Assembly (NCBI GenBank): GCA_024679065.1
Contig: JAGIQG010000009.1
Location: forward strand, 107,694,001-107,758,000
Length of the DNA: 64,000 nucleotides
Reading direction: 5' to 3'
Source: Sphyrna mokarran
Taxonomy: Eukaryota
Each line of letters begins with the position of its first letter. Position 1 is the first letter of the stretch. The notes under the pieces are model-generated. The model was not told the origin of the DNA, ran no database searches, and worked only from the letters and a program-made list of their open reading frames with translations. This document shows, piece after piece, positions 5,881 to 38,890 of this stretch. Made by a program: the position numbers and the translations under genes.

Positions 5881-6845
5881 ATGCTAAATTGGGTCAGATG
5901 AATTAACAGGGTAAATACATGGAGTTAAGGAGATAGGGCCCCTCAGATTAACCAGGTCTCTCTCTTTCCCACAGAAATCATATTGCCATTATAACATATT
6001 TATTCCTTACCCGTTTTACAAATTGAAATGTTTGTTGTCGATGGGCCGAATGACCTCCTTCTGCACTGTAGGGTTTCTATATGTTATCAACATTAACCTC
6101 ACTTTGTGAATCTGTTAACGATGCACTTTTACTGTTCCATTGTACAACTTTTAAGGTTCATTTCCGCTACTGTAAAGGTTCCCTTCTGATCTTCTCCCTT
6201 GGTTTTGACTAGCAGGGAACCATCCTGGTGCTAAATGGCGTGAGGGAGCGGAGGGAGGGTGGCGTGGTTTGCAAGTCCAACACCCATTCATTAACTGCGA
6301 GATAGCTGCGTGCAATATTGCTTAGCCTAGTTCCGCGGGTTGGAAGTTCCAACTTCCATAGAATTCCTGTAGTGCAGAAGGAGGCCATTCGGCACATCGA
6401 GTCTGTACCAACCACAATCCCGCCCAGGCCCTATCCCCATAACCCCATATATTTACCCGCTAGCATCCCCCCTCCCCCACTTATAGGCTAATTTACCATG
6501 GCCAATCAACCTAAACCGATCTACCTTTGCATCCGAGTCCCGACCCCTTTGCAAAAGTCTTAACCTTAACAAACACCATGAGTTTCTACTCGCAGTGTGC
6601 AATCCCCTCAATATATCCGGTGATGCCAATGAAGTATTCAAGCCCAGTTATTTTTAAAACATCGAAACCGCAGTTGGAAAAATTGCTGAAGTTTCTTGGC
6701 GTTGTATGATATCAACTCGCCACAGGTTAGTCTCTTTACACGTCAGCTCCTGCGCTCCGAGCTGTTTTTTTTTTGGCTTTAACATTTCTTCCCATCGCCG
6801 CAGGACGCGTATGAGTTCCTGCTGTTTTCCAGAGCAAGGATCAAG

Positions 6846-6903
6846 ATGCAAACCATTCGCACATGGACATTTCTGAATTTCATGGCAATTCTTCTCCATA
6901 TCG
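6846..6903 (+). CDS. NCR3-like exon 1, signal peptide MQTIRTWTFLNFMAILLHI
   Basis: ATG in aagATGc context, hydrophobic leader, G|GTGAGT donor in phase 1 matching the V exon acceptor. Confidence 0.8.
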
Positions 6904-9900
6904 GTGAGTCTCCCTGTTATCACACTGAATTTATTTAGATTTTTTAACACGTACAAATTGTTTCTTTTTGCACAGATGAACGATAAAGCTTGTTGTGCTG
7001 AGACAACGGTTTTGTTTAACAACGCTGCCTTACCCTTTTGCAAATTTGCTTCTTGATTTGATTTGTTACTGTTAGATTTATTTGTGTACAGTGAAAAGTA
7101 TTGTTTCTTGCACTCTGTGCAGACAACATACCGTTCATAGAGAAGGAAAGGAGAGGGTGCAGAATGCAGTGCTACAGTCAGAGCTTGGGTGTAGAGAAAG
7201 GTCTACTTAATGCAAGATAGGTCCATTCAAAAGGCTGATAGCAGCTGAGAAGAAGCTCTTCTTGAGTCCGTTGGTATGTGACCTCAGGCTTTTGTATCTT
7301 TTGCCCCACAGAAGAAGATGGAAGAGAGAATGTCTGGGGTGTGTGAGTCCTTAATAACGCTGTGTGCTTTTCTGAGGCAGCGGGAAGTGTAGACAGAGTT
7401 AATAGATTGGAGGCTGGTTTGCATGATGGACTGGGCTACATTCACAACTTTTTATAGCTTCTTGCACTCTTGGTCAGAGCAGGAGCCAAACAAAGCTGTG
7501 ATACAACCACAAAGAATGCTTTCTGTGGTGCACCTGTAAAAGTTGGCGAGAGTCATAGCTGACACGCCAAATTTCTTTAGTCTGTTCTTATTGTTGAAGT
7601 TCATTTAAGCAAGAATCATAGAAACCTTATAGTGCAGAAGAGGCCATTTGACCCATCGAGTCTGCACTGACCACAATCCCACCTAAGCCCTATCCCAGTA
7701 ATCCCACATATTTATCCAGCCAATCCTCTGATCTATGCATCCCGGGGCACTAAGGGGAAATATAGCATAGCCAATGCACCTAACCAGCACATCTTCAGAC
7801 TGTGGGAGGAAACTGGAGCACCCAGACGAAGCCAATGCAGACAAAGGGAGAAAGTGCAAACTCCACACAGACAAGCCTGGAATCAAATCTAGGTCCCTGG
7901 AACTGTGAGGCAGCAGTGCTAACCACTGTGCCACCATGCCACCAGTGTCCCATATTGTATCACGATGTACCAATACAGAGGGATAGGCTTTGGTGGAAAA
8001 ATGGCAGATGGAATTTAATCTGGGCAAATGTGAGGTGATGAATTTGAGAAAGTTTAATGCAGGAATGAAGTATACATTAAATAGTTTGGTGGAATCAGCG
8101 GGTGGATCTGGAAAGATGCGACTCTTGTAACCCTCTATCCCAGGGAGCTGTGAGATTGGGTATATCCAAGACATAAGGCAATGGATTGTTGAGTTCAAGG
8201 GAACTCATTGACATGAAGATAATGCAGGAAGGTGGGATTGAGGGAAGAATGCAGTAGACTCAAGGGATCAAACGGGGGTTTGGGTGGCATGGTGGCAAGT
8301 GGTTAGCACTGCTGCTTTGCAGAGCCTAGGGCACGGGTTCAATTCCTGGCTTGGGTTACCATCTGTGTGGAGTCTGCACATTCTCCCCAGGTCTGCGTGG
8401 GTTTCCTCTGAGTACTCCGGTTTCTTCCCACATTCCAAAAATGTGCAGGTCAGGTGGATTGGACATGTTAAATTACCCCTTAGTGTCCAAAGATCTGTAG
8501 GTTAGATGGACTAACATGGGAATTATATGGAGTTACGGTGATAGGATGGGAGAAGGGCCTGTGTCAGAGAGTTGGTGCAGACTCGGTGGACCAAATTGTC
8601 TCTCTCACTATGGGAATTCTATGATTTTTTTGTTGGGGGGGGGGGGCACGGTGGCACAATGATTAGCACTGCTGCCTCACAGTGCCAAAGTCCTAGTTCA
8701 ATTCTCAACTCGGGTAACTGTGCCGACTTTGCACATTCTCCCCATGCCTGAGTGGGTTTTCTCCAAGTGCTCTGGTTTCCTCCAAAGTTGTGCGGGTTAG
8801 GTGGATTGGCCATGCTAAGTTGCCTCTTAGTGTGTGTGTGTGTGTGGGGGGGGTGGCTAGCAGGGTAAATACATGGAATTATGTGGATAGGGTCTGAGAG
8901 GGATTGATGTCGGTGCAGGCTCGATGGGCCGAATGGCCTCTTTCTGCGCTGTAGCGGGTCTATGACTGTCTGCCCCAGCTCCTGTTTCAGATGTCTCTAT
9001 GATTACATTGTTCTATTTGTACTCCAGACTATGGGCTGAGGGGTGAAATTCAAGTGTTCCAGTCTCCGGATGTCATCAATGTCACAGAAGGCGACTCGGT
9101 GCAGCTAAACTGTACGTTTGAATCGAATCAGAGTGTCGGGCATGTTTTATGGAGTCGGGCCTTGGAAAACATGGAGCTTTCGGACGGCAATTTTTTCTAC
9201 CACAGCCGGATACAGAAGTCAGGGCCAAAGTTATTCGCCCAGCGCATGGCTTTCATTAGAGTCAACAATGTGGTGAAAATGGACTCTGATTTTTACTACT
9301 GCAAGGTGGAAGTTCAGGGAGTTGGAAGTGGAAACGGGACAGGAACCCAACTCATTGTGACTGACAGTAAGTCAAACATACCCGAGTTCGAATCAGTTCC
9401 CACAATTTGACTTGTGTATGGCTTGTGCGTTTAACATGCTCCTGGATTTCAATTCCCTTTTGTGTCTCCAAGTGTAAATCATTTATAAAGTCTTTCTAAT
9501 CAAAAAAGAACCAAATTAGATTGATGTCCGAGCCATTGGTAATTAAATGACACATAACTTCAAATCAATAGACAGTATCAATGCTCTTCGGAAATCTGGC
9601 TGCCTCTACCCTAACTGGCACCCAGTTCATCCATTATTCTCACTGGCTCCCCATCTAATCAATTTTAACATTGTCTCTTCAACCTTCTTCCACTGGGAAA
9701 AAAAATTCCAAAAGTCTGAAAACAGGCATCAAGCGACTCAAGAACAGTTTCTTCTCTGCTGCCATCAGGCTTTTCAGAGAACCGTACAGTGCAGAAGGAG
9801 GCCATTCAGCCTATCAACAATAGGCAACAATCCTGTCTATAACCTAATCCCTGTAACTCCACACATTTGCCCCACTAACACCTCTAAGCTATGCATTCCA

Positions 9901-12900
9901 GAAAACTCAGGGCAATTTGGACAGTGATAGCCTTTTTCCTAGGATGGAGAAAGCTAGCACGAGGGGACACAGCTTTAAATTAAGGGGTGATAGTTATAGG
10001 ACGGATATCAGAGGTAGGTTCTTTACCCAAAGGGTGGTTCGGGAGTGGAATGCCCTGCCTGCAGCAGTTGTAGATGCGCCAAGTTTGGTGGCGTTTAAGA
10101 GGTTAGTTGATAAGTATATGGAAGAGAAGGGAATGGTTTAGTTTGGAGGGGCATTGCTTTTTATATTGGTCGGCGCAACATCGAAGGCCGAAGGGCCTGT
10201 TCTGTGCTGTAATGTTCTATGTTCTATGTTCTAATTTTGCATGGCCCTGTACAAACAGTACAAACAGCACATGTTTGTACTGTGGGAGAAAATTGGAGCA
10301 CCCAAAGCAAACGGCATGGTAGCACAGTGGTTAGCACTGCTGCTTTGCAGCTCCAGGGACCTGGGTTCAATTCTCGGCTTGGGTCACTGTGTGGAGTTTG
10401 CACATTCTCCTCGTGTTTGTGTGGGCTTCCTCTAGGTGCTCTGGTTTCGTCCCACAGTCCAAAGATGCACAGGTTAGATTGATTGGCCATGCTAAAATTG
10501 CCCCTTAGTGTCCTGAGATGCTTAGGTTAGAGGGATTAGTGGATACATATGTCGGGGTGTTGGGAGCCTCATAATCAGAGAATGCCTACAATGGAGAAGG
10601 AGACCTTTTGGCCCATCACTACATCCAATACAGATTTAAGTTTAATTGAGAGGAGAGGGAAAGTTTTACCCTATTCCTCCCCCACTTGCCCTGTCACCTC
10701 TTCATTGAATGTGTTTGTATTACTCACTTCCTTACTCACAGAAATCTATTCCTTCTGAGTTGATCCATTTCTGCTTGACCTCCTTCTTTACCCCCAACTT
10801 ACTTCTAACACATGCCAGTTGAAAAATAATTCATTTCCCCAAATTGTGAAGTGCCTGTGATCACGTTGTTTTATTCTTTGATATGGTATAGGATCATAGG
10901 AATTGGTTGTCCTATTTAGGACAATGTGATCAGCGCAGGCTTGGTGGGCTGAAGGGCCTGTTCCTGTGCTGTACTGTTGATGTGCTTTGTTCTCTTTAAT
11001 TAGTGGCAGAAGTCGGCAAAATCAGCCTTGAAGTCTACAGCATGGTGGCACACCTGTTAGCACTGCTGTTTCACAAAACCAGGATCCAGGATTTGATTCC
11101 TGGCTTGGGTCACTGTCTGTGTGGAGTTTGCATGTTCTGCCCATGTCTGCATGGTTTTCTTCCGGGTGCTCTGGTTTCCTCCCACACTCCAAAAGACATG
11201 CTGGTTAGGTGCATTGGCCATGCTAAATTCTCCCTCAGTTTACCCAAACAGGCGCCGGGGTGTGGTGTCTGGAGGATTTTGTCAGTAACTTCATTGCAGT
11301 GTTGGTGTAATCCTACTTGTGGCACTGATAAATAAAACTTTAAAATTTAAATAATCTTTATAAACTCCATTGCATTGACTGGATGTCACAGAAAACCTCA
11401 GTTCAATTATTTTGATTTAATTTGATTTATTATTGTCACCTGTATTAGTGAACAATGAAAAGTATTGTTTCTTGCACTATACAGACAAAGACAAAGAGAA
11501 GGAAAGGAGAGTGCAGGATGTAGTGTTACAGTCATAGCTAAGGTGTAAAGAAAGATTAATTTAATAGGAATGTCCACTCAAAAGTCTGATGGCAGCAGGG
11601 ACAAAGCTGTTCTTGAGTCGGTTGATACGTGATCTCAGACTTTTGCATCTTTTTCTCAATGGAACAATTAGAAGAGAATGCCTGGGGTGTGGGGACCTTG
11701 ACTAAACTGGCTGCTTTACTGAGGCAGCAAGAAGTCTGGACCGAGGCAATGGATGGAAGGCTGATTTGTGTGATGGACTGAGCTTCATTCATAATCTTTG
11801 GTAGCTTCTTGTGGTCTTGGGCAGAGCAGGAGACATGCCAAGTTGTGATGCACCAAGAAAAAATGCTTTCTACGATGCATCTGTAAAGGCTGATGAGAGT
11901 TGTAGCTGACGTGCCAAATTTCCTTATTAATTAAGTTAATTAATTAATGAATTAAGTTAAACTTAATGAATTAAGTTGATTACTCAGGTCTACTTAATGC
12001 ACTGAGTTCACAAACCCTGCAATGTTTTTCAAGTGTCCTGTTGCCAATAATATCCAACTTGACTTTCAGGGAAGTTCTCCCCAATCTATTTTTTTCTCAG
12101 GGTTTCAGATTGCTAATGGTTAAACTGTGAATGGTGAACTAAATGCTCTCTGTTGTCTCACACCAGGGAAGGTAACTGATTGTCCCCCAGCACACGTGGC
12201 AACCAAAGATCAACTACAACCACTGATACTGGGGTTCCTAGGGTTATCCATTCTGATAATGATACCCCTAACTGTGCGGATATACTATCAACATAAAGGT
12301 ATGATGTGACTGCTGTAGTAATCATAGCATTATCAGGGAGGTGATGGCATTGTGGTATTGTCACTGGACTCATAATCCAGACACCCAGAGTTGTGTTTGG
12401 GGGAACGTGGGTTCAAATCCCACCATAGCAGCTGGTAAAATCTGAATTCAATTAAAAAATTTTGGAATTGAAAGGGGAGAAATACAAAAGTGTCCGGAGG
12501 AACCATTTTTTTTATCACACAGAGGACGGTGAATATCTGGAACAAGCTGCCAGAGGTAGTAGTGGAGCCAGGTATAATTTTCTCTTTTAAAAAGCATTTA
12601 GACAGTAACATGGATAGGATGAATATCGCGGGATAAGGGCCAAACATGGGCAATTAGCACTAGCATTGAGGTTAAAAAGGGTGCGGCATGGACAAGTTGG
12701 GCCGAAGGGCCTGTTTGCATGCTGCAAATCTCTGACTGTGTGACCTCTAATTAAAAAAAATCAAAAGATGACCATGAAACTGCTGTCAATTGTAAAAATC
12801 TGTCTGGTACACTAATGTTCTTTAATGAATGAAATCTACTAGCCTTAACTGGTCTGGCCACATGTGACTCCAGATCCATGTATGGTTGACTCAACTGGAA

Positions 12901-15900
12901 ATGGGCAATAAATGTTGGCCCAACCATATCCCATGAATGGATAAAAGAAAGCTTTTCTGTTAATTGTTTGAATAATTCAGGCCATCCTGTAATTACAGAT
13001 CTGTGGCAAATTTGGGCAATGAATACGGAAATTGTGCCTTTTAATCATACATGTAATTCTACAAACATTAACAGCTGTTATTTGCAAAGACCCTAAAAGA
13101 CAGCCTCTAATCTTAAATCCTTTCTTTTTACTTCAGTGATCTCAAGATTTAAAAGGTATGTAACATTGTTATTCATGGATGCATTGGCGTTTACAATTTA
13201 GCAATATGGAATCTTGCATTACATTTAACTTGTTCTTATCTTGCAGTGCACAGAGAGTCACACTGGCCAGAAGACCAGATTTTGTATACGGTAATCCTTC
13301 ATTTTCGGCAGTAGTACAGTTGAAAGTCAAATGCGGTGTCTTTTCAGGCTGATTTTCTTGCCGCGATGCATAATGGCAATTAGGTTTCGATTCTAGAAAG
13401 AGTTGTCAGTAATTAATGAGACATTGGCCTTGCAATCAATAGCGATAACCAGAACCATGCATGGACCAATCACCTCACCTTCAAGAAGAACCTCCCTCCT
13501 ACTCACTGTGTGTACAGCTTTTGATTTGATTTATTATTATCACGTGAATTGGGATTTTTACTTAATATATAATAGGTCCATTCAAAAGTTAGCACTGCTG
13601 CTTCACAGCGCCAGACACCTGGGTTTGTTCCCCAGCTTGGGTCATGCATCTTCTCCCCATATGTGCTTTGGATTCCGTCTGGGTGCTCCACAATCCGAAA
13701 GACGTGCTATTTAGGTGCATCGGCCATGCTAAATTCTACCTCAGTGTATTTGAAAAGGCGCCAGAGTGTGGCGACTATGGGATTTTCACAGTGACTTTGT
13801 TGCAGTGTTACTTGTGACTCTAATAAATAAACTTTAAACTGTAATGATGGCAGCAGGGAAGAAGCTATTCTTGAGTCAGTTGTTACATGATATCAGACTC
13901 TTGTATCTTTTTCCTGAAGGAAGAGAATATGTCTGGGATGATTATGCTTTCCTTCATAATAAGTGGGAAGTGTAGATGGTGGTTAGTGGATGGGAGGCTG
14001 GTTTGAGTGATGGACCGGACTACATTCACAACTCTTTGTAGTTTCTTGCGGTCTTAGTCAGATCAGGAGCTGTACCATTCTGTGATATAATTGGAAAGGA
14101 TGCTTTCTATGGTGCATCTGTAAAAATTGGTGAGAGTAGTAGCGACTCTATGGAAACAAAATGAATGAGGGTCCATTTAGTACCAGTCACCTCTTGACTC
14201 AGAAAGGTGAGGGTTTATGTCCTTTTCAGCTTATGAGCAGATAAAATCTCGGCTGACCTCCTTCAATGCTGAGCTGTCTTACAATGCTGTCTCACAAGTG
14301 GGATGTCAAACAGTCTGACTGCTCAGCTGGGCGTAAAGAAAATCCCATGTGATGCTCTTAAAGGGGCAGTCAACACAAATCACAATATTGGATGTAATAA
14401 TGTGTATTGTCCTTAAAGGTGCAATATGGATCTGGAGTAACAGAGTACTTCTACAGAGTACTACTTCTGATATCAGTAGTCGATATCAGATCTTTATGTT
14501 CTATCACAGTGCTGTTTTTGGGAACTTGCTGAGTGCGAATTGTCCAGCATGTTTCTTACATGTGGAGCCACAGCTATACTTTAAGATGCTCTTAGAGGTT
14601 GGGAATTACATTATCACAGAGAGAGTATAGAAATCTGGAACTGTCTCTCTGTCTCAAAAAGCTACTGGGGCTTATTAAACATTCAAAACTAAAATTGAGA
14701 AACTTTGCATGGGCCAGGATATCATTATGGAATCCATGTAGCTAGGTAGGCTTCAGACAAAGAACTGGCATGATCCAACAGAATGGTAGCCATAAGGTGA
14801 AGATGCCGGCGTTGGACTGGGGTGGGCACAGGCAGAAGTCTCACAATACCAGGTTAAAGTCCAGTGGGTTTATTCGGAATCACGAGCTTTCAGAGCACTG
14901 CTCCTTCATCAGGTCACTTGATGAGGAAGCAACTGAATAGTGACACAGGATCAAGGGGCTATATCGCCTCATCCTGTCACTATATTTCAGGTATCATTCC
15001 TGACTTTGGAAACTTAAAGGTTGGTGAATCTTAATAGGGTTTGGCTATTGTGAGAGCATTGCTGATGGGGAAATTCTAACTCTCCTACTTGCGTGTTATA
15101 TATGAAAAATGCCTACTTGTACAAAGTATTGTATGACAAGCAGTAGACCAAGCTAATGTCAATTTGTCTATGACCAGAATGAAGGAAGGGGTTGGGGAGA
15201 AGGAAGTAGCAAGTAGGATCTGTTGATTAAGAGCAATGATACTATGTCTGCTTTATGTAACTATTATAATATTGTATGTTTATTTTACAGATACAATTGA
15301 CCTTCAGGTAAGACCATTTCTATTCCAATTTCAAATCACATTATACACATTGGATATATTTCCCCCAAATCCCAGTTAGCTTCAAAATGGGTGTTATGTT
15401 TCATAGTTACAATTGAAATCATAGCTGACGAGGCCAGAATTCTTTCCGCATCTTAAATTGCCCTTGGGAACGTGGTGGATGAGCTTCCTTCTTGAAATAT
15501 TGCAGACCATCTGCCCTGCTGGTCCTCCTGACTTGGCATGGCCAATCAACCTATGGACCATGTGATAGGGCCTGGGGATGGGATTGTTATCAGTGAAGTC
15601 TTGATTGGCTGAATGGCCTTCTTCTGCTCTGTAGGGATGCCATGATTCCCTCGGCCACAGTCCACTGGATGTGTCTCCTCGTATCTGTGTGGGTTTCCTC
15701 CAGGTATTCTGCTTTCTTCCCACAGTTCAAAGATGTGCGGGTTAGGTTGATTGGCCATGCTAAGAAATTGCCCCTTAGTGTCCAGGGATCCGTAAATTAG
15801 AGGGATTAGTGGGTATAATATGTAGGAATTTGGGGCAGGACCTGGGTGGGATTGTGTTCAGTGCAGACTCGATGGGCTGAAGGTCCTCTTTCTGCACAGT

Positions 15901-17116
15901 AGAGTTCTATGATTCTATGATTGTGATCTTAAACTTTGAATGGACATGGATATGTCAGTACATTGGGCAGAGAAGTGGTGGATGAAGTTCAGTGCAGCGA
16001 AGTGTAAAATGATTGAGAACGAGTGGGGAGAGACAATAAAGCAAGAAATTCTAAAGAAGGTGTTGGACCAGGGGGACCTTGGTGTATATGTACATAAGTG
16101 ATCGAAGGTGCCAGGATGTTTTGAGAATGCAGTTAATAAAGCTTGTGGAATCCTAGGTTTGATTCATGGGGCACTGAGCACAAGGGTAAGTCATATTGTA
16201 CTTGTACAATATATAGTCAGCCTTCACTTGGAGAACTGTATCCAGTCCTGGGTGCGAAACTTGAGAGATGATGTGAATTGGGGAGAGTACAGAGGAGATT
16301 CACAGAGAACTGCAGCTGGGATGATATTTTGGAGAGGTTGGGATGATTTTCCCTGGAAACTGAAAGAAGACTTGCTTGAAGTATTCAAGATCCTGAGAGA
16401 TACGGAGAGGGTAAATCATGAGAAAATGTTCCCACTCAAAGTTACATCGTGAATTGGAAGTCACAGTTTCAAACAGAGGGTGAAACGGGTAGTAGTATTG
16501 TGAGATTCATTGATTCACTCATTGGAATTTCCTGAGATGAGGGTGGAGACAGGTTCAGTTGGAACATTTTTGGAAAGAAAGTGCATTGCTATGGGAAAAT
16601 GAAGAATGTGCAAACATATGGGGATAAGGCAAAGGAGTGGGACTGGGTAGAATGTTCTTTCCGAGAGCCGGTGCAGACATGATGGGCCGAGCGGCCTTCT
16701 TCTGCATTGTAAAGAGTGATCCTGATTCCCATTGGCTTCAGCTTTGCTGGGGCTCTCTGAGTTTACTGGGATGGTTTGATGAAACTGACTAGTCACTGGG
16801 CCATTTCAGAGGGCATTAGAGAGTCAACCATCGTGCTGTGGCTCTGGTCAGAATGCGTAATGGTGGCAAATTTCCTTCCCTAAAATACATTAGAAAATGC
16901 AAGTGGATTTTGACCATAGTACTGCGGTTCTGGAGTCCAGATCGAGTAATAAAAATTTCCCACCTTGTTGATGAGATTTGAACTCATGTCTCCGGAGCAT
17001 TAGTCTGGTCACCTTGATTACTGGTGTTGTAGTGTTATCCCTGTGGCATCATTGCCATAGACTGGGTTCAACTTGGCCATTTCCTGTTCAAACTCCATTC
17101 TGGCGTCAAGCCCCCA

Positions 17117-17149
<33 letters not shown>

Positions 17150-17622
17150 AGTTCTAATATTACACTGCAGTGCAATCCATGTGAAATCAGCAGAAGCCAT
17201 TCCGTCTCTCCCACAGCCCACCAATGTCCAAACTGACGGTTAGCGTGGTGCAGTTTGCGGGTGGGATCATGCTGTGCGAAGCCTGGCTGCCACATGTCCG
17301 AAACGATGGCACTTCAAAAAAGTGCTCCGACGGCTGGGAAAGGCTTGTTTGGGATGCACAGTGTACATGATACCAACCTAAGTTATTTCCTTAAATAATA
17401 AGTTCAAAATAAGTCATTTTTTGTTGATTTTTTTTTTTGTGTGGTTGCATCTTTTTTCTTCGTTCCTAGGAAACATCTTTTGACAGCAGACTGGGGACAA
17501 CTGTGCCACAGAACTATAATGCTTCTGTCCCTGAGTACAGCACCGTAAATGCACCGAGCACCATTAAAGGATCCTACCCTTCAAACCAGTGTGTCACCTT
17601 TACCCAGTCTACGTTCCAATAG
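6846..17622 (+). CDS. NCR3: NKp30/NCR3-like Ig-V type I membrane receptor, 7 coding exons (6846-6903, 9028-9366, 12167-12298, 13137-13155, 13247-13290, 15291-15307, 17470-17622), 762 nt, 253 aa
   Basis: All introns are GT-AG and phases match (1,1,1,2,1,0), giving one open frame: leader, V domain, stalk/TM, tail. The V domain end YYCKVEVQGVGSGNGTGTQLIV resembles human NKp30 YVCRVEVLGLGVGTGNGTRLVV. The TM end ..GFLGLSIL..IYYQHK resembles NKp30 ..GFYAVSFL..VYYQGK. Orthologue versus paralogue status is not resolved. Confidence 0.72.
7050..7585 (-). mobile_element. Rex1/Babar-type LINE 3' end
   Basis: Minus-strand RLKxSFF-type RT end with (AAATC)n tail. Other copies at about 11410-11925, 13840-14140, 18195-18825, 20295-20835, 35180-35700(+), 37010-37400, 50800-51470(+), 52330-52745(+), 60220-60700(+), 62430-62848(+). 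Confidence 0.7.
7615..7940 (-). mobile_element. HE1-type V-SINE
   Basis: Full head, V-domain and tail. Confidence 0.82.
8283..8965 (+). mobile_element. Two tandem HE1-type V-SINEs
   Basis: Heads at about 8283 and 8645, each followed by V-domain and tail. Confidence 0.8.
9028..9366 (+). CDS. NCR3-like exon 2, VJ-type Ig V-set domain
   Basis: Acceptor tactccAG, donor A|GTAAGT, phase 1-1. Canonical Cys (LNC), Trp (VLW), DxxxYYC and J-like GTGTQLIV. Four N-glycosylation sequons: NVT, NCT, NQS, NGT. Confidence 0.93.
9919..10232 (+). mobile_element. Young CR1-type LINE 3' end inserted in an HE1 SINE
   Basis: TRGHSFKLRGD..RFFTQRVVREWNALP peptide, (TATGTTC)n tail, AATTT on both flanks. Confidence 0.8.
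11041..11345 (+). mobile_element. V-SINE with alternative tail ending AATAAATAAAACTT
   Basis: HE1 head and V-domain followed by aaattctccctcag..caggcgccgg..gtaacttcattgcagtg..aataaa. Confidence 0.78.
12167..12298 (+). CDS. NCR3-like exon 3, stalk plus transmembrane segment (KVTDCPPAHVATKDQLQPLILGFLGLSILIMIPLTVRIYYQHK)
   Basis: Acceptor tctcacaccAG, donor G|GTATGA, phase 1-1, hydrophobic stretch of about 19 aa followed by YYQHK. Confidence 0.88.
13137..13155 (+). CDS. NCR3-like exon 4, 19-nt microexon (VISRFK)
   Basis: Strong polypyrimidine acceptor tttctttttacttcAG, donor AG|GTATGT, phase 1-2. Confidence 0.7.
13247..13290 (+). CDS. NCR3-like exon 5, 44 nt (SAQRVTLARRPDFVY)
   Basis: Acceptor ttcttatcttgcAG, donor G|GTAATC, phase 2-1 fits both neighbours. 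Confidence 0.72.
14175..14590 (+). mobile_element. Ancient Deu-domain SINE (SacSINE1-like)
   Basis: Decayed match to the recalled Deu core (gctgttt.tggga.cttgctgtgcgcaaattggctg); similar copies at about 19410-20000, 39090-39420, 50240-50680(-). Confidence 0.55.
14795..14932 (-). mobile_element. Penelope 3' terminal repeat with minimal hammerhead motif
   Basis: Shared Penelope tail; minus strand CTGATGA-A-GGAGC-AGT-GCTCT-GAAA-GCTC at 14881-14915. Confidence 0.72.
15291..15307 (+). CDS. NCR3-like exon 6, 17-nt microexon (DTIDLQ)
   Basis: Acceptor tttattttacAG, donor CAG|GTAAGA, phase 1-0, completes the YDTI motif. Confidence 0.7.
15940..16710 (+). mobile_element. Degenerate CR1-clade LINE 3' fragment
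   Basis: KACGILGLI..HLENCIQSW..DLLEVFKIL peptide remnants. Confidence 0.7.
17118..17149. repeat. Poly-C homopolymer (32 nt)
   Basis: Direct; similar G/C runs at about 26138-26158, 28900-28919, 31289-31310, 34674-34691. Confidence 0.9.
17470..17622 (+). CDS. NCR3-like exon 7, terminal cytoplasmic exon (ETSFDSRLG...PEYSTV...STFQ*)
   Basis: Long T-rich acceptor ending ttcctAG, phase 0, open to TAG at 17620-17622, contains YSTV. Confidence 0.78.
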   Translation, partial: ETSFDSRLGTTVPQNYNASVPEYSTVNAPSTIKGSYPSNQCVTFTQSTFQ

Positions 17623-17764
17623 CTGTGGAAAAGACGGGTACTGAAGGACCCTTAAGGAAGGAATAACAAGTTTTAACCCATGAGTCAGTTGCATTTCAGC
17701 AGTATTCTTGAATGGTACAATGTTAATGGAATTTCGATCAGAAATGATTGTTAGCATTATGCAT

Positions 17765-17770
17765 AATAAA
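17765..17770 (+). terminator. Probable polyadenylation signal of the NCR3-like gene
   Basis: AATAAA about 140 nt after the stop, in non-repeat sequence. Confidence 0.5.
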
Positions 17771-19649
17771 CATGAAATACTTACACTGTGGCTACATTTC
17801 AGCATACTGAGTTGGCTGCCACTCGCATTTATCCAAGCTCTACAAACTGTTCATTTTCCTGCTAATGTAATTAGCATTTGTTTTGGGGTCAGACAGGGAG
17901 AGGATATGTCCCCTTCTCTTCATGCTGTCCCACTTTTCTTTCAGCCCATGTCTAACTCTTGTTGCGCCTGTAATGCCTTATCCTTATCTTGTGATTTGTT
18001 GCCTTCTTGTCTCCTGGACCTTTTTCTGTACCTTTTTGATTTATTACTACTCCTGTTATTGTTTTCAAGTGTGGAGTGGTGAATGGGAGGTACTCTCGAA
18101 TGGCGGAACAAAAAGGGATGATTGTGGGTCGGGGGGAGAGGAAAATGGTTTGCTTCTGCCAATTTTAGGTGGTTGAGGGGAGGTGATTGCTGAGGATTGA
18201 TTTGATTTATTATTGTATTAACACAGTGAAAAATATTGTGCCTTGTGTGCTATACAGACACCATTCATAGAGACGGAAACGAGAAAGTGCAGAATGTAAC
18301 GTTACAGTTATAGCAAGGGTGCAGAGAAAGATCAACTTAATGCAAGGTAGGTCCATTCAAAAGTCTGACAGTAGCAGGGAAGAAGCTGTTCTTGAGTTGG
18401 TTGGTACATGACCTCAGACTTTTGTATCTTTTTTCCCGACAGAAGAAGGTGGAAGAGAGAATGTCTGGGGTGCGTGGGGTCCTTAATTATGCTGGTTACT
18501 TTGCCGAGGCAGCAGGAAATGTAGACATAGTCAATAAATGGGAGGCTGGTTTACGTGATGGACTGGGCTACACTCACGACCTTTTTGTAGTTCCTTGCGG
18601 TCTTGGGCAGAGCAGGGGCATACCAAGCTGTGATACAACCAGAAAGAGTGCTTTCCATGGTGCACCTGTAAAAGCTGGTGAGAGTTGTAGCTGACAAGCC
18701 AAATTTCTTTAGTCTTCTGAGAAACTAGAGGCGTGGGTGGGCTTTCTTAACTATGGTGTTGGCACAGGGGGACCAGGACAGGTTGTTGAGGATCTGGACA
18801 CCTAAAGCCCTGAAGCCCTTGACCTGTTCTACTTCATGTGTGTTAGGGGGAGAGGTCTGTTAAGTTGGGGGTTTCTGGGGTAAATATTAAGGTGACATGA
18901 GTGTTGAAGAGACCTTTTGGGGGTTTCGTGACTGTGATGTTTTGTACCTGTTGCTGAGTCAGACTCAGGTTTTGTTGTGGGTGGAGGGGGGGGAGGTTTG
19001 TAGATGGTTACTGGGGGATTGGGGGGGGGGGGGAGGTCAGACAGCAGGGGGGACAAAACTTCTGAGGGGTTTCCTAATAGGGAGTGTTGGTGGGTAGGTG
19101 TTGGCTGAAGGATGGGTTATTGTCGTTAAGGTTTAACTCGATGCCTAAACCTCTTGCATTGATTTGATTTATTATTGTATTAACACAGTGGAAAGTATTA
19201 TTCCTTGCTATACAGATACTCCCAAAATTGGGAGTTTGAACCTCAGTGCAACGATTGAGACAAAAACATAAAGTTTGGAAAATCTCAGCGGGTCTGGCAG
19301 CATCTGTGGAGAGAGAATTGAGCCAATGTTTCGAGTCTGGGTGATCCTCCATCAGAGCTTTTGTTTCAGATTCCAGCATCTGTAGTATTTTGCTTTTATC
19401 GAAGTTTGGAACGTGGGCAAATCCAGTATTGAGGGAGCGCTGCACTGCCATAGATGCTGCTTTTCAAAGGAAATTTTAAACCGAGACTCAGTCTGACCCC
19501 TCAAGGTGGGTACAAAATACACCCGTCCCCCTAGCCACAATTACATGGAAGAGTAGACTGATTCTCCCAGATTGCAACTCCACATTCATCTCTCAATTTA
19601 CATCGCTGTCCCTCTGGCAAGATTCAGTGCAAATTAGCCAGCACGTTTC

Positions 19650-29300: not shown

Positions 29301-32300
29301 CATTCAGACTAATACAAAACTGGCTCCCGATACTTTCACTATCACTGCAGCTGGGACCAGCAGAGCAGACTCAATAACCCCGCGATATTGTAATGCGTTT
29401 GGAAAAATAGGGGGAAGGAATAAAAGCACTCAGGATAACATGGGGGTGGTCCAGAGAGTCAGATTCTTTCACGCTTGAGATTGGGTGGTCCCTGAGAAGG
29501 TTTCAAGGGAGAGACAGCATTGGGGCTCTTGAGAGAGCATTGAGAGAGAGGGAAAGAGAAGGGAGAGAACTGGGGAGGGATTCAGAGTGTGTGTGTGTGA
29601 GAGAGAGAGAGACGGCAAAAGGTGGTGGGTGGGGGGAACCAGAGGGTCGGGGGGTGGGGGTGGTGATGAGACTGTGTGTTTGTATTTGGAAGGGTGCTGG
29701 GGTAAACAGGGAGAGAGACCCAGAACATGAGAGGAGGTACAGAGAATCAGATACTCACAAATGTACAGAGACACACACACACACACACACATACACACAA
29801 ATACTGAGATACACAGGGACACAGAGGCAGACACATGTAGGAACAGTGACAGACAGATTCACACAGACGGGGGCACAGAGACAGTTAGATTCACACACAT
29901 AGAAACACACGGGCTCCTAATGTACCACATTTCTGCATAACTTTCAAACATCTGTGAAGTATTAAGCAAAGTACAGACACGTTGCAGCTGTGGTGCTAAT
30001 TGAACACTGCCTGGGTTACAGATTGCAGTTAATTTATGCTGAAAAATAACTTAACACCTTCTCAGAACATGCACAGCATGTCCCTCACATAAACCAAATC
30101 CAGGAGAACAGAACGATTCTGCTCCACAGGGTTAACTCGAAGACGGGAAGGTGGGGCCGTGGGGAGGATTTAAAACTGGTCAGTTTGGCTCCTCCGATCC
30201 TGTTCTTACAGCAGAGCCCGTTCTCCCTCCTCTGCTAACTCTGCAGTGCTGATCTCCAACCAGCAGGTGCCAATGTTGGACTCAGAACTTGAGCAGTCTT
30301 GAGTAATATTAAATTCCTTAAACAAGAATACACAAAGCTCACCTACCCTGCCCTTAAAGGGGAATGCACACCAATGTCACCACTCACCTACGCTGCCTTA
30401 AAGGGGAGTGCACTCCAATGTCACCACTCCCAACCCTTGCTTAAAGGGGAATGCACACCAATGCAACTGCTCATCTACCCTGCCTCAAAGGGGAATGCAC
30501 ACCAACTTCACCACTCACGAATCTTTGCTTATAGGGAATGCACATCAATGTCACTGGTCCCAAACCCTTGTTTAAAGAGGAATGCCACCAATCAGCCTCA
30601 CTCTAAAACATCCCAGAGGCTTCCCATGACTAGGATAGAATCTAATTCGCCTCATTTTGAACCATTTGAACATTTTTTTGTTAAATCCTGAAGCAGTGGT
30701 TCTGCGTGCCATTGCCCCCACACCTTCCACTCCCATCTGGAGACAGGCCACCAGTGAGAAGATCCTAGGCAGACATTATTGTAATCCACAGCTTTGCTCA
30801 AACACCCAAGGAAACCAATCCAAAAATAAAACACTTCTGACCTGGGAACTTTCTGGAAACTCATCCGCTGTCCGATGGACCAGGGTGTTGCTCTTATTGC
30901 CAACTCGTGCGTAGATGCAGTTGGCTGCGGCGTCATCCGGCACACTCAGTTTGTCGTACTGATAGTCTGTTAGCTGCTCCATCGCCTGGTGACAGAGAGG
31001 AAAGCGGTCAGACGCCTGAAAAACACAGGCCTGGTTCTGTCATCGCTCCCCAACAGCAACTCAATCCTATCAACTACCATCCAAAAATGGAGTGAATCCC
31101 CTCTACGCTGTGTCTAACCCTGTGCTGTACCTGTCCTGGGAGTGTTTGATGGGGACAGTGTAGATGGAGCTTTACTTTGTATCTAACCCCGTGCTGTACC
31201 TGTCCTGGGACTGTTTGATGGGACAATATAAAGAAAGCTTTATTTTGTAGCTAATCCTGTGCTGTACCTGTTCTGAGAGTGTTTGATTGGGGGGGGGGGG
31301 GGGAGGGGGGAGCAGTGTAGAGGGAGCTTTACTGTGTATCTAACCCCGTGCTATACCTGTCCTGGTATTGGTTGATGGGGGACAATGTAGAGGGAGTTTT
31401 ACCTTGTGTCTAACCCCGTGCTGTACACATCCTGGGAGTGTTTGACGGGGACAGTGTACAGGGATAAATATCTGATGAGAAAAAACTGGAAGAAGGCAGG
31501 GGAGTGGGACCAGGTTATTATTACAAAAGAACCAGCACCAATAACAAATTGAATGGTCTGTTTCTGGGCTGTAACCATTTTGTGAATGGAGGCGGCATGA
31601 GGGAGTGTGAGGCAGCACAGAGAGTAAGCACGAGAGAGATCGAGTGAGAACAAGGTATTGACATTGAGATTGAGCGACAGAGACAGCGAGACAGAGAGCA
31701 AGAACGGGAGAGTGAGAGCGAGACAGCGAGAATGTGAAATGGGTAATATTGTGGGTATCACAGTGGTTAGCACTGCTGCCTCACAGCACCAGAGACACAG
31801 GTTTGATTCTGGCCTCAGGCCACTGTTTGTGTAAAGACTGCACATTCTCCCCGTCTCTGCATGGGAGGTTTCCTCTGGGTGCTCCACTTTCCATCCACAG
31901 TCCGAAAAACGTACTGGAGAGTACGTGTGGCGTGGGGGGAACAGGGGGAGAGCAGCAAATAAGCAGCAGCTGAAGCATAGGGAGGGGGAAGGGTGTGGAT
32001 ATTGGGGGAGAGCAGAGGGGCATAAGAATGGAGAAGGATTCCTGATTGAGGGGCTAGAGGGCTGGGGGTTATAAATGGGTAATTCTGGAGGCTGCTGTGT
32101 GTGAGGTTTTGCATTCAGAGGGGAGAGTGCTGGGGATGGGTAAAGTGGAGTAACCTCACCTTGATGGCCTTTCGAGCAGCTTCACTGTTCCCGATGATGA
32201 TGGTGCTGGGACCTCCCATGCTGCAAAAACTCTTCAGATGATGGGGTTCGGGAATATGCAGGATGGAGACAGTAAAATCCTGGATAGCGAAACAAAACAG

Positions 32301-38300: not shown

Positions 38301-38890
38301 GAATAAGATTTGCAGGGCCCAGGGAACGTGGGACGTGGTGAGCTATATGCTCAAATATCTAGCACAGAGACAATGGGTTGAAGGGCCTCCCTCTGTGCTG
38401 TAACCATTCTTACAGACGAAAGTTAACAGATTCCCAGCCTATGGTCAATGCGTGCGTCCAGTGAATGAGCCTGCAGTGCCACAGGGGCTATTGGCACTCA
38501 TGAAATCATGCCCAAGCCATCAGGAATGTCTTTGACAGGGTGGCCATTTTATTGCGGCTAATTTTGCCAAAACTGAGTTTCAGACAGGGAAGCAGGGCTA
38601 ACTGTCAAGAAGGCGAGTGCGAGAGTGAAAATGAGCGAATGAGTGAGGTGAAGAAAAAGAGAACATAAGAGAGAACAAGCAAGAGAAAGAGCGAGTGAGC
38701 GAACCGTGAATGAGAGCGTGTGTGAGAGAGGAAGAGGTAGAGCAAGCAAGAAAGAGGGAGAGAGAGCGAACAAGAGACACCAGCTTTCACCTGTGAAGAA
38801 GACATCGCTGCCGTCGAGTGTCGCTTTCTCATCCGTCACCTCAAACACCCGTAGCTTCAGCTCTTCCAGAACATTCTTCACTGTCTCCAC
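26208..38890 (-). CDS. DDAH2: Dimethylarginine dimethylaminohydrolase 2, coding exons 2-6 (38890-38791, 34798-34725, 32279-32160, 30985-30842, 26324-26208); 5' partial
   Basis: Spliced translation [108 protein letters not shown]. Exons of 100/74/120/144/117 nt, all GT-AG. SKWTNH, CSMGGP and LSS are DDAH2-type (DDAH1 has SKRTNQ, CSMAGP, LTCC). Confidence 0.94.
29540..29910. repeat. Compound (GA)n/(GT)n/(CA)n low-complexity region
   Basis: Direct; similar GA-rich tracts at 31595-31730 and 38600-38780. Confidence 0.8.
30338..30600. repeat. Minisatellite of about 43-bp units, about 6 copies, DDAH2 intron 5
   Basis: Unit similar to ctcacctaccctgccttaaaggggaatgcacaccaatgtcacca. Confidence 0.85.
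30842..30985 (-). CDS. DDAH2: DDAH2 coding exon 5 (144 nt)
   Basis: [48 protein letters not shown], caccAG acceptor and CAG|GTCAGA donor. Confidence 0.93.
31105..31462. repeat. Tandem repeat of about 69-bp units, about 5 copies, DDAH2 intron 4
   Basis: Unit ctaaccccgtgctgtacctgtcctgggagtgtttgatggggacagtgtagagggagctttactntgtat; the third copy has an expanded G run. Confidence 0.88.
32160..32279 (-). CDS. DDAH2: DDAH2 coding exon 4 (120 nt)
   Basis: [40 protein letters not shown], atccAG acceptor and AAG|GTGAGG donor. Confidence 0.93.
32800..33700 (-). mobile_element. CR1-type LINE 3' fragment interrupted by an HE1 SINE (about 32975-33312)
   Basis: [26 protein letters not shown] peptide; LINE sequence continues on both sides of the SINE. 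Confidence 0.8.
34725..34798 (-). CDS. DDAH2: DDAH2 coding exon 3 (74 nt)
   Basis: [25 protein letters not shown], ttccAG acceptor and AAG|GTGAGA donor. Confidence 0.93.
35863..36200 (+). mobile_element. HE1-type V-SINE, near full length
   Basis: gcacggtagcacagcggttagcactgctgcctcacag head through ttctatgattctat tail. Confidence 0.88.
38791..38890 (-). CDS. DDAH2: DDAH2 coding exon 2 (100 nt)
   Basis: [33 protein letters not shown] with ttgcAG acceptor and G|GTGAAA donor. Confidence 0.93.

What the first reader, a model, noticed from the sequence alone, without database searches (positions are those of the whole stretch)
6846..17622. NKp30-like receptor built like an inhibitory checkpoint receptor
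Seen: the V domain and TM end resemble NKp30, but the TM position of the NKp30 Arg (LLLRAGF) is uncharged here (PLILGF); the only Arg sits at the cytoplasmic edge (TVRIYY). The tail of about 80 aa has two Tyr motifs, FVYDTI and PEYSTV, 29 residues apart. Known: mammalian NKp30 has a short tail and activates through its TM Arg pairing with CD3zeta/FcRgamma, whereas PD-1-type receptors use tandem ITIM/ITSM motifs about 25 residues apart to recruit SHP-2. Inference: this is a self-signalling, possibly inhibitory NKp30-family member, perhaps half of a paired activating/inhibitory system that recognises B7-family ligands. Neither motif is a strict ITIM or ITSM, because the -2 residues are F and P.
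Basis: partly seen in the sequence, partly recalled or inferred. Interest (0 to 1): 0.85.

Follow-up and report, generated by a model that had tools for sequence, protein, structure and literature searches.

The report
Shark NKp30-like receptor with tyrosine tail
This is an intact shark gene for an NKp30-family immune receptor that has no charged residue in its membrane span and carries its own tyrosine-bearing tail; the same gene is already on record from nurse shark and other sharks, so it is a solid but fairly ordinary family member.

Summary
A seven-exon, 253-codon gene lies on the + strand at 6846-17622, and all six introns are GT-AG. Its single-exon VJ-type V domain matches human NKp30 best, both by sequence and by fold. 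The 21-residue membrane span has no charged residue. The tail is about 84 residues and carries FVY|DTI (split across an exon junction) and PEYSTV, 29 residues apart.

The exon pieces line up in order with six full-length shark proteins. One of these is nurse-shark NCR3 QTT61903.1, a public record.

Across 7 taxa, the PEYSTV tyrosine (Y-S-[T/N]-[V/I]) is the only invariant tail tyrosine. The FVYDTI tyrosine is present in 4 of 7. A third, C-terminal tyrosine is present in 4 of 7 and is Phe here. The window copy has no strict ITIM or ITSM; 3 of 6 orthologues have one.

An inhibitory, self-signalling role is plausible but unproven. The effector could be SHP-1/2 or, as I propose, Csk.

The "paired" idea is weak. 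The Lys-TM neighbour seen in other sharks shares only 35% V-domain identity.

No RNA run was listed and no shark genomic DNA could be fetched. The scan holds many first-stage notes of NKp30-like clusters elsewhere in this genome.

Verdict: a new member of a known kind, of moderate to low interest.

The parts
6846..6903 (+). Exon 1: start codon and signal peptide (MQTIRTWTFLNFMAILLHI), ending in phase 1. The donor is GTGAGT.
   Evidence: It is 79-94% identical to the N-termini of the Scyliorhinus and Mustelus models.
9028..9366 (+). Exon 2: a single-exon VJ-type Ig V domain of 112 full codons, with a J-like G-x-G-T-x-L-x-V segment (GTGTQLIV) and four N-x-S/T sites.
   Evidence: It matches Pfam V-set at 9.6e-09 and human NKp30 (3noi) at 9.5e-11.
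12167..12298 (+). Exon 3: stalk with Cys (TDCPP), an uncharged 21-residue TM, and the start of the tail (RIYYQHK). The donor GTATGA is at 12299.
13137..13155 (+). Exon 4: a 19-nt microexon (phase 1 in, phase 2 out) encoding (V)ISRFK(S). Orthologues have AISRLKG or VISRLKG here.
13247..13290 (+). Exon 5: 44 nt encoding AQRVTLARRPDFVY. The Tyr of motif A is at 13287-13289.
   Evidence: Cetorhinus has TVTLARRNDY and Scyliorhinus has TVTPARRRSADMY.
15291..15307 (+). Exon 6: a 17-nt microexon encoding (D)TIDLQ. It completes motif A, FVY-D-TI.
17470..17622 (+). Exon 7: the last 50 codons plus a TAG stop. Motif B, PEYSTV, lies at 17530-17547. Phe at 17599-17601 sits where 4 of 7 taxa have a third Tyr.
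17765..17770 (+). An AATAAA that could be the polyadenylation signal, 143 nt after the stop.
   Evidence: This is a pattern match only.

Best explanation
Identity (shown). This is the orthologue, in a carcharhiniform-type shark, of nurse-shark NCR3 QTT61903.1. That makes it one lineage of the shark NCR3 (NKp30) multigene family. It encodes a 253-residue type I membrane protein with a signal peptide, one germline-joined VJ-type V domain, a stalk Cys, an uncharged TM and an 84-residue tail. The tail is encoded by four small exons of 19, 44, 17 and 153 nt.

Mechanism (inferred). The TM has no basic residue, so the receptor cannot couple to CD3zeta/FcRgamma-type adaptors the way mammalian NKp30 does. 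It must signal through its own tail. The core docking site is the invariant Y-S-[T/N]-[V/I] tyrosine (PEYSTV here). A second tyrosine lies 28-29 residues upstream (FVYDTI here). After phosphorylation by Src-family kinases, these sites would recruit SH2-domain inhibitory effectors and dampen activating signals in the same cell. The effector is unresolved. My estimate is tandem-SH2 phosphatases SHP-1/2 about 0.3 and Csk about 0.2. The stalk Cys may make the receptor a disulfide-linked dimer.
For: Gene model. All introns are GT-AG and the phases are consistent. The exon pieces are colinear with 6 of 6 full-length orthologues.

Family. In the phmmer search of PDB the top four hits are all NKp30, at 9.5e-11 to 4.2e-10, and the next is SIRPalpha at 2.5e-07. 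With the orthologue profile, NKp30 scores 5.4e-14 to 1.1e-13 against SIRPalpha at 2.3e-09. In Foldseek the top four hits are all NKp30, with TM 0.77-0.82. The window V domain falls in a 10-row elasmobranch clade with SH-aLRT 97. The orthologue P0156 is QTT61903.1, named NCR3. PMC12227049 cites nurse-shark NCR3 genes MT914154-914161 (passage seen).

TM. It is uncharged in the window, in 5 of 6 full-length orthologues and in the Cetorhinus fragment. Bichir and sturgeon NCR3-like proteins have an Arg in the TM and tails of only 8-11 residues.

Tail constraint. 13 of 74 ungapped tail columns are invariant in 7 taxa, and these include the Y-S of motif B.

Inhibitory leaning. Canonical ITIMs occur in 3 of 6 orthologues: LEYSTI at the motif-B site in Heterodontus, and LTYAQV in Ginglymostoma and Stegostoma. 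VEYATI occurs in another nurse-shark NCR3. The A-to-B spacing is 28-29 residues in 3 of the 4 taxa that have both motifs. PD-1 has an ITIM at Y223 and an ITSM, TEYATI, at Y248 that docks SHP-2 (PMC10901852, passage seen). Csk binds YSSV, and Src-family SH2 domains bind YEEI/V, in Cbp/PAG (PMC3492796, passage seen).
Against: In the window copy, none of the six tail tyrosines fits [SIVL]xYxx[IVL] or TxYxx[VI]. I read this by eye.

The -2 residue of the invariant motif is Pro in 5 of 7 taxa.

The motif A tyrosine is missing in all three orectolobiform orthologues. The C-terminal tyrosine that forms the canonical ITIM in nurse and zebra shark is Phe here.

There are no expression data for this locus: no RNA run was listed. 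I found no functional data for any shark NCR3 in the papers I could read.

The Heterodontus orthologue carries both a TM Arg and the long tail, so the lineage is not uniformly of the uncharged-TM type.

Only one of the five AlphaFold models was confident (mean pLDDT 83, against 47-55 for the others).
Confidence: 0.5

Rival explanations
1. The tail is activating, co-stimulatory or switch-type rather than inhibitory. The phosphotyrosines would recruit Src-family kinases or small SH2 adaptors and pass on a positive signal, as CD28-family and SLAM-family receptors do.
For: There is no strict ITIM in the window copy. Motif A (Y-[D/E/G]-x-[I/V], with YEII in Heptranchias) resembles the Src SH2 class YEEI/V. 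Heptranchias has YSTL followed ten residues later by YSTV, an ITAM-like spacing. The stalk Cys recalls CD28-type dimers.
Against: 3 of 6 orthologues and another nurse-shark NCR3 carry canonical ITIMs. No YxxM or YxN motif is present in the window tail. ITAM-like spacing is seen in only 1 of 7 taxa.
Confidence: 0.15
2. The two Tyr motifs are mainly Yxx-hydrophobic sorting signals. They would control endocytosis and surface level, as in CTLA-4, rather than serving as phosphotyrosine docking sites.
For: Both YDTI and YSTV fit Yxx[LIVMF], and so does every orthologous motif A and B. The stalk Cys gives a CTLA-4/CD28-like layout. The comparison with CTLA-4 is recalled, not from a call.
Against: A sorting signal does not explain the invariance of the +1 Ser or the [T/N] at +2. 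It also does not explain the canonical ITIMs in the orthologues. The two functions are not mutually exclusive.
Confidence: 0.15
3. The locus is not used as modelled. It could be a silent or decaying copy, or its main product could be a short-tailed isoform. Retention of intron 3 would end the protein three codons after exon 3.
For: No RNA run was listed. Reading on past the exon 3 donor gives G-M-M and then a stop. The window has Phe where relatives have the ITIM Tyr. It also differs at two V-domain columns that are invariant in the six orthologues: Pro to Phe in N-P-F-Y, and Lys to Arg.
Against: All seven exons are open, with canonical splice sites. Mustelus shares the loss of that Pro (NIFY), so it is a lineage trait and not decay. 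Tail identity to the orthologues is 40-50%, not far below the V domain's 56-68%.
Confidence: 0.08
4. The gene is not NCR3 proper. It could belong to the paralogous NCR3H lineage or to another VJ-type family.
For: A review passage states that NCR3H paralogues exist in most non-mammalian vertebrates (PMC11999971, passage seen). In my tree the bichir, sturgeon and axolotl NCR3-like rows do not join the shark clade with support. I had no sequence named NCR3H to compare.
Against: The nurse-shark orthologue was deposited as NCR3. A DDAH-family gene lies tail-to-tail in the window. Unchecked scan notes place AIF1 about 432 kb away and call the DDAH gene DDAH2. I recall that both are MHC class III neighbours of NCR3 in human.
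Confidence: 0.1

Closest known systems
Nurse shark NCR3 QTT61903.1 (P0156). I take it to be one of the nurse-shark NCR3 genes MT914154-914161, on recall of Kinlein et al. 2021, a paper I could not read.
   Same: The layout is colinear across all seven exon pieces. The V domain is 56% identical and the tail 41%. The TM is uncharged, the stalk has a Cys, and the Y-S-T-V motif is invariant.
   Different: The nurse shark lacks the motif A tyrosine (it has DEAIEV there) and has a canonical C-terminal ITIM, LTYAQV. The window has FVYDTI and a Phe at the C-terminal site.
Human NKp30 / NCR3 (PDB 3noi, 3pv6, 6yjp)
   Same: It is the best sequence and fold match of the V domain, at 31-32% identity and TM 0.77-0.82. 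Both have the J-like G-x-G-T-x-L-x-V end of the domain.
   Different: By established knowledge, the human receptor has a TM Arg and a short tail and signals through CD3zeta/FcRgamma. I could not fetch the full-length human sequence here. The window protein has no TM charge and has an 84-residue tyrosine-bearing tail and a stalk Cys.
PD-1 (ITIM VDYGEL at Y223, ITSM TEYATI at Y248; PMC10901852)
   Same: Both have a single V domain, an uncharged TM, and two tail tyrosines 25-29 residues apart. The distal one is of the E-Y-[A/S]-T-[I/V] type.
   Different: The V domain is not PD-1-like: no PD-1, CD28 or CTLA-4 chain appears among the 60 rows shown. The window motifs have Phe and Pro at -2, so they do not meet the ITIM or ITSM definitions.
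Cbp/PAG1 (Src SH2 sites YEEI/V plus the Csk SH2 site YSSV; PMC3492796)
   Same: Motif A (YDTI, YEII, YGII, YDQV) resembles the Src-SH2 class, and motif B (YSTV, YSTI, YSNI) resembles the Csk site. These SH2 classes read mainly the +1 to +3 positions. That would fit the unconstrained -2 residue.
   Different: Cbp/PAG is a palmitoylated adaptor with almost no ectodomain, and it is not homologous. The resemblance is at motif level only and is untested.
Xenopus MHC-linked NKp30-like (XMIV) genes. This is recalled from Ohta et al. 2006 and Flajnik et al. 2012, neither of which is held in the library.
   Same: As I recall, this is a non-mammalian NKp30-family expansion with both charged-TM and long-tailed tyrosine-motif members. 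A frog NCR3-like protein fetched here (Hyperolius, P0101) has an uncharged TM and an 80-residue tail with several Tyr.
   Different: The frog sequences fall in a separate clade, and the tails are not alignable with the shark tail.

Membership tests
NCR3 / NKp30 family | Single-exon, germline-joined VJ-type V domain with a J-like G-x-G-T-x-L-x-V end. | tested here: met
   One 339-nt exon encodes the whole domain and ends ...GSGNGTGTQLIVTD. It matches Pfam V-set at 9.6e-09.
NCR3 / NKp30 family | The V domain is closer to NKp30 than to other V-set receptors. | tested here: met
   The top four PDB hits are NKp30, both by phmmer (9.5e-11, against SIRPalpha at 2.5e-07) and by profile (5.4e-14 against 2.3e-09). 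The top four Foldseek hits are NKp30. The margin in Foldseek is small: rank 5 has E 4e-09.
NCR3 / NKp30 family | Linkage to the MHC (class III region). | tested here: inconclusive
   Two exons of a DDAH-family gene lie on the minus strand, at about 38780-38893 and 32154-32294. PDB holds only DDAH1, so DDAH2 could not be told from DDAH1. The AIF1 note from the scan is unchecked.
NCR3 / NKp30 family | Basic residue in the TM for CD3zeta/FcRgamma coupling (the mammalian activating form). | tested here: not met
   The 21-residue TM has no R/K/H/D/E. So this gene is a family member by its ectodomain but not an activating, adaptor-coupled NKp30.
NCR3 / NKp30 family | Binds B7H6. | not testable with these tools
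   There is no ligand gene in the window and no binding data.
ITIM/ITSM inhibitory receptors (PD-1 type) | At least one [S/I/V/L]xYxx[I/V/L] or TxYxx[V/I] motif in the tail. | tested here: not met
   The six tail Tyr in the window are RIYYQH (two), FVYDTI, QNYNAS, PEYSTV and GSYPSN, and none fits (read by eye). It is met in 3 of 6 orthologues.
ITIM/ITSM inhibitory receptors (PD-1 type) | Two tyrosine motifs about 20-30 residues apart, suited to tandem SH2 phosphatases. | tested here: met
   The spacing is 29 residues in the window, 28 in Heterodontus, 29 in Scyliorhinus and 36 in Heptranchias. The B-to-C spacing is 20-21 in four taxa.
ITIM/ITSM inhibitory receptors (PD-1 type) | Recruits SHP-1/SHP-2 on phosphorylation and inhibits. 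| not testable with these tools
   No biochemical data.
Paired activating/inhibitory receptors | A neighbouring gene with a near-identical ectodomain but the opposite signalling module. | tested here: not met
   The Lys-TM neighbour seen in Mustelus (P0154 part 1) and Heterodontus (P0077) is 35% identical to the window V domain over 140 columns and lies in a different starred clade. The neighbour in this genome lies outside the window and was not seen.

The most novel reading that the evidence does not exclude
This tail may not be a degenerate ITIM/ITSM pair. It may instead be a receptor-borne copy of the Cbp/PAG logic. Motif A (Y-[D/E/G]-x-[I/V]) would dock a Src-family kinase, and the invariant motif B (Y-S-[T/N]-[V/I], with Pro at -2 in 5 of 7 taxa) would dock Csk. 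Ligand engagement would then bring Csk to the very kinase that phosphorylated the tail. Where motif A is lost, a C-terminal ITIM replaces it, so the lineage keeps two docking tyrosines while changing which ones. On this reading, the ancestral NKp30-family receptor was a self-signalling, Cys-linked dimer, and coupling through a TM Arg, as in mammals, came later. The Heterodontus orthologue, with a TM Arg plus the long tail, would be a living dual form.
Probability: 0.2. Interest if true: 0.6.

Novelty: new member of a known kind. Interest (0 to 1): 0.3.

Why it matters
NKp30 is the one NK receptor with clear orthologues from sharks to humans, so how its signalling end evolved bears on how activating and inhibitory immune receptors arose. 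This locus adds a cleanly resolved seven-exon model, including 19-nt and 17-nt microexons. Four public models of the same gene in other species are truncated or fused (Mustelus, Pristis, Chiloscyllium punctatum and Cetorhinus); missed microexons are my suggested cause, which I did not test. It also adds a cross-shark picture of which tail tyrosines are constrained. It does not reveal a new kind of receptor, because long-tailed NCR3 sequences with an uncharged TM and ITIMs are already public from nurse shark. The testable point that is new here is that the only invariant tail tyrosine has a Csk-type context rather than an ITIM-type one.

Tried and rejected
RNA evidence. The look-up of sequencing runs (kind rna, window:12000-17700) listed no run. 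Read laying therefore had nothing to lay and was not called.

I could not compare exon structure or synonymous change at DNA level, and used protein models only.

Literature. Kinlein 2021, Flajnik 2012, Ohta and Flajnik 2015 and Janes 2023 are not held. I know them only from reference lists and from recall. Whether they already discuss these tail motifs is unknown to me, and their supplements could bear on it. Searches for XMIV, NCR3H and NCR3+ITIM gave nothing usable.

Mammalian full-length NCR3. I searched with a turtle protein and got 23 proteins, all of them turtle.

More orthologues. A profile search returned 6 proteins among 5100 candidates, all already known to me. Heptranchias P0152, which was part of the query alignment, was not among them. 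No protein flagged as the window's own was returned.

Exon 4 frame. Finding the 19-nt microexon resolved this.

A short match of the exon 7 start (FDSRLG) to SINE-derived ORFs looked like repeat origin. I rejected this because the segment aligns with orthologues (ETPSESRQG and similar) and no repeat overlaps it.

A weak TM-like match at 30950-31102 (E 0.003, with an in-frame stop) is not convincing.

The Atlas search with an orthologue tail found no usable hit. Rfam gave no match in the window. Pfam gave no family for the DDAH exon ORF.

Tree limits. The tree covers 94 rows: only stored proteins of 350 aa or less, and only domains covering at least 85 profile positions. P0151 was dropped as a duplicate of P0002. 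It was built with 'quick' on 116 columns. 32 of 90 inner branches are unresolved. It lacks named PD-1, CD28 and TMIGD2 rows, so it cannot define NCR3 monophyly.

Full report
WHAT IS THERE

The + strand between 6846 and 17622 carries a complete seven-exon gene. I fixed the exon borders by reading the sequence:
- E1 6846-6903: ATG and signal peptide.
- E2 9028-9366: the V domain.
- E3 12167-12298: stalk, TM and the first tail residues.
- E4 13137-13155: 19 nt.
- E5 13247-13290: 44 nt.
- E6 15291-15307: 17 nt.
- E7 17470-17622: 50 codons and a TAG stop.

All six introns are GT-AG. The phases run 1,1,1,2,1,0, and the sum is 762 nt, or 253 codons plus the stop. My first exon 3 end, 12306, was wrong; one search showed it and the donor GTATGA is at 12299. 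An AATAAA lies 143 nt after the stop. The introns are full of SINE-type repeats, but none overlaps an exon. The window has no N and only one Ig exon. The V exon finds nothing else in the window below E about 2. Fifteen related proteins find no other Ig exon at E 0.01 or better.

PLILGF, TVRIYY and PEYSTV are at the stated places. FVYDTI is not contiguous. It is FVY at the end of E5, a split Asp codon, and TI at the start of E6. I first thought E5 was out of phase with E3. The two tyrosines are 29 residues apart, and the tail after a 21-residue TM is about 84 residues. The TM has no charged residue.

INDEPENDENT SUPPORT FOR THE MODEL

A search of 1.84 billion representatives with the V exon alone gave 289 proteins at E 0.001 or better, 46 at 1e-10 and 6 at 1e-30. 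Six full-length shark proteins are colinear with the window's seven exon pieces, with no gap or overlap:
- Heterodontus francisci NCR3-like (P0002/P0151).
- Heptranchias perlo (P0152).
- Scyliorhinus canicula LOC119976535 (P0153).
- Chiloscyllium plagiosum (P0155).
- Ginglymostoma cirratum NCR3 QTT61903.1 (P0156).
- Stegostoma tigrinum (P0006).

Four further models are partial or fused: Mustelus asterias P0154, Cetorhinus P0078, C. punctatum P0004 and Pristis P0008. The Mustelus V domain is 82% identical to the window's, so the window comes from a related carcharhiniform-type shark. Identity of the window to the six full-length proteins is 56-68% in V, 36-58% in stalk plus TM, and 40-50% in the tail. 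The joined step is left out.

FAMILY

The V exon matches Pfam V-set (9.6e-09). Among solved structures the four best sequence matches are all human NKp30, at 9.5e-11 to 4.2e-10. The next is SIRPalpha at 2.5e-07. A profile of ten shark rows widens the gap, with NKp30 at 5.4e-14 and SIRPalpha at 2.3e-09. None of the 60 rows shown is PD-1, CD28, CTLA-4 or TMIGD2.

An AlphaFold model of the V exon had mean pLDDT 83.0 and pTM 0.76, but the other four models scored only 47-55. Its four best Foldseek matches are NKp30 chains, with TM 0.77-0.82. SIRPalpha and shark VNAR domains come close behind.

In a tree of 94 V domains, the window sits in a 10-row clade with SH-aLRT 97, made only of elasmobranch rows including a sawfish. 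Rat SIRPalpha lies far away. However, bichir, sturgeon and axolotl NCR3-like rows do not join the shark clade with support, and 32 of 90 inner branches are unresolved. The tree alone does not define NCR3.

PMC12227049 cites nurse-shark 'NCR3 genes' MT914154-914161 (passage seen). I take the two nurse-shark proteins found here, QTT61901.1 and QTT61903.1, to belong to that set. I recall that these come from Kinlein et al. 2021, which reports eight NCR3 subtypes linked to the shark MHC. That paper is not held.

CONTEXT

Two exons of a DDAH-family gene lie on the minus strand, tail-to-tail with this gene. One is at about 38780-38893 (DDAH1 residues 102-139, E 1.5e-05). The other is at about 32154-32294 (E 1.1e-09). 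Unchecked scan notes call it DDAH2, place AIF1 about 432 kb away, and list many NKp30-like clusters in this genome. This fits an MHC class III setting but does not prove it.

TM AND STALK

The window, 5 of 6 full-length orthologues and the Cetorhinus fragment have an uncharged TM. The Heterodontus orthologue has an Arg at position 7 of 21, exactly where the window has a one-residue gap. Bichir and sturgeon NCR3-like proteins have a TM Arg and tails of 8-11 residues. Turtle and axolotl proteins also have a TM Arg. So the window protein lacks the feature that couples NKp30 to adaptor chains. The stalk Cys (TDCPP) is present in the window, in 5 of 6 full-length orthologues and in Cetorhinus. This agrees with scan note s1-887827.

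TAIL

Of 74 tail columns ungapped in all 7 taxa, 13 are invariant. They include the Tyr-Ser of motif B and an S-N-Q near the C-terminus.
- Motif B reads PEYSTV (window), LEYSTI, PDYSTV, REYSNI and PVYSTV (three taxa). The Tyr is present in 7 of 7. The -2 residue is Pro in 5 of 7. The motif is a canonical ITIM only in Heterodontus.
- The motif A tyrosine is present in 4 of 7, as FVYDTI, HQYDQV, ELYEII and DMYGII. It is absent in the three orectolobiforms.
- A third, C-terminal tyrosine is present in 4 of 7. It is a canonical ITIM (LTYAQV) in nurse and zebra shark. In the window it is Phe.
- A-to-B spacing is 29, 28, 29 and 36 residues. B-to-C spacing is 20-21.

The window copy has six tail tyrosines, and none fits the ITIM or ITSM pattern. 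The lineage therefore keeps two or three tyrosines at about 20-30-residue spacing but changes which ones.

MECHANISM

It is shown that the receptor cannot use a TM charge and that it has a constrained tyrosine site. The rest is inferred. I propose that it signals through that site after phosphorylation, most likely negatively, for three reasons. First, canonical ITIMs appear in 3 of 6 orthologues and in another nurse-shark NCR3 (VEYATI). Second, the spacing suits tandem SH2 phosphatases. Third, the distal motif resembles the PD-1 ITSM TEYATI, which docks SHP-2 (PMC10901852, passage seen).

Against a plain ITIM/ITSM reading stands the Pro at -2. An alternative that explains this comes from Cbp/PAG, where Src SH2 domains bind YEEI/V and Csk binds YSSV (PMC3492796, passage seen). 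Motif A resembles the first class and motif B the second. My estimates are: inhibitory of any kind about 0.5 (SHP-1/2 about 0.3, Csk about 0.2), activating or switch-type 0.15, sorting signals only 0.15, and unused locus or short isoform 0.08.

PAIRED SYSTEM

In Mustelus, the gene model P0154 fuses an upstream NCR3-like gene with a Lys in its TM to this gene's first two exons. In Heterodontus, a Lys-TM NCR3-like protein (P0077) has the next accession number on the same contig. Scan note s1-886659 places a gene with a TCR-beta-like TM 11 kb before the window. So an activating-type neighbour is likely. Its V domain, however, is 35% identical to the window's and lies in another starred clade, together with QTT61901. 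This is a mixed cluster of divergent subtypes, not a classical pair sharing one binding domain.

NOVELTY

The gene, its orthologues and the inhibitory-type layout of shark NCR3 proteins are already in public records. New here are the resolved microexon structure, the cross-shark motif table, and the Csk-type reading of the invariant site. I rate this a new member of a known kind, with interest 0.3.

Noticed in passing
window 32154-32294 and 38780-38893, minus strand: Two exons of a DDAH-family (dimethylarginine dimethylaminohydrolase) gene lie tail-to-tail with the NCR3-like gene. They match human DDAH1 residues of about 156-224 (E 1.1e-09) and 102-139 (E 1.5e-05). A scan note calls the gene DDAH2, which would fit MHC class III synteny, but the paralogue was not determined and the other exons were not located.
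   Followed up: partly
window 30337-30592: A tandem array with periods of 44, 87 and 131 nt, about 5 copies at 77-82% matches, gives an open frame with repeated L-T-Y-P/A-A-L-K-G units. It looks like a simple tandem repeat and not a coding tail.
   Followed up: partly
window 30950-31102, + strand: A weak match (E 0.003-0.004) to the TM and juxtamembrane part (…RKA[IV]RRLK…) of the Heterodontus orthologue, interrupted by an in-frame stop. It could be a relic of another NCR3-like TM exon or a chance match.
   Followed up: partly
P0002/P0151 (Heterodontus francisci orthologue): This orthologue has both an Arg in the TM (position 7 of 21) and the long tail with a canonical ITIM (LEYSTI). It may be a dual or intermediate signalling form.
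   Followed up: no
P0152 (Heptranchias perlo orthologue): The tail carries an extra YSTL ten residues before YSTV. This is an ITAM-like spacing produced by a local duplication of the motif.
   Followed up: no
window 6000-19000, introns: At least nine families of dispersed direct repeats (tRNA-like SINE heads and others) fill the introns. Their translations (…GFDSRLG…, …NPGPW…) recur all over the window and dominate the ORF lists.
   Followed up: partly
P0154 (Mustelus), P0008 (Pristis), P0004 (C. punctatum), P0078 (Cetorhinus): The public gene models of this orthologue are fused with the neighbour or truncated after the V or TM exon in 4 of 10 species' models. The 19-nt and 17-nt microexons may be the reason; I did not test this.
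   Followed up: no
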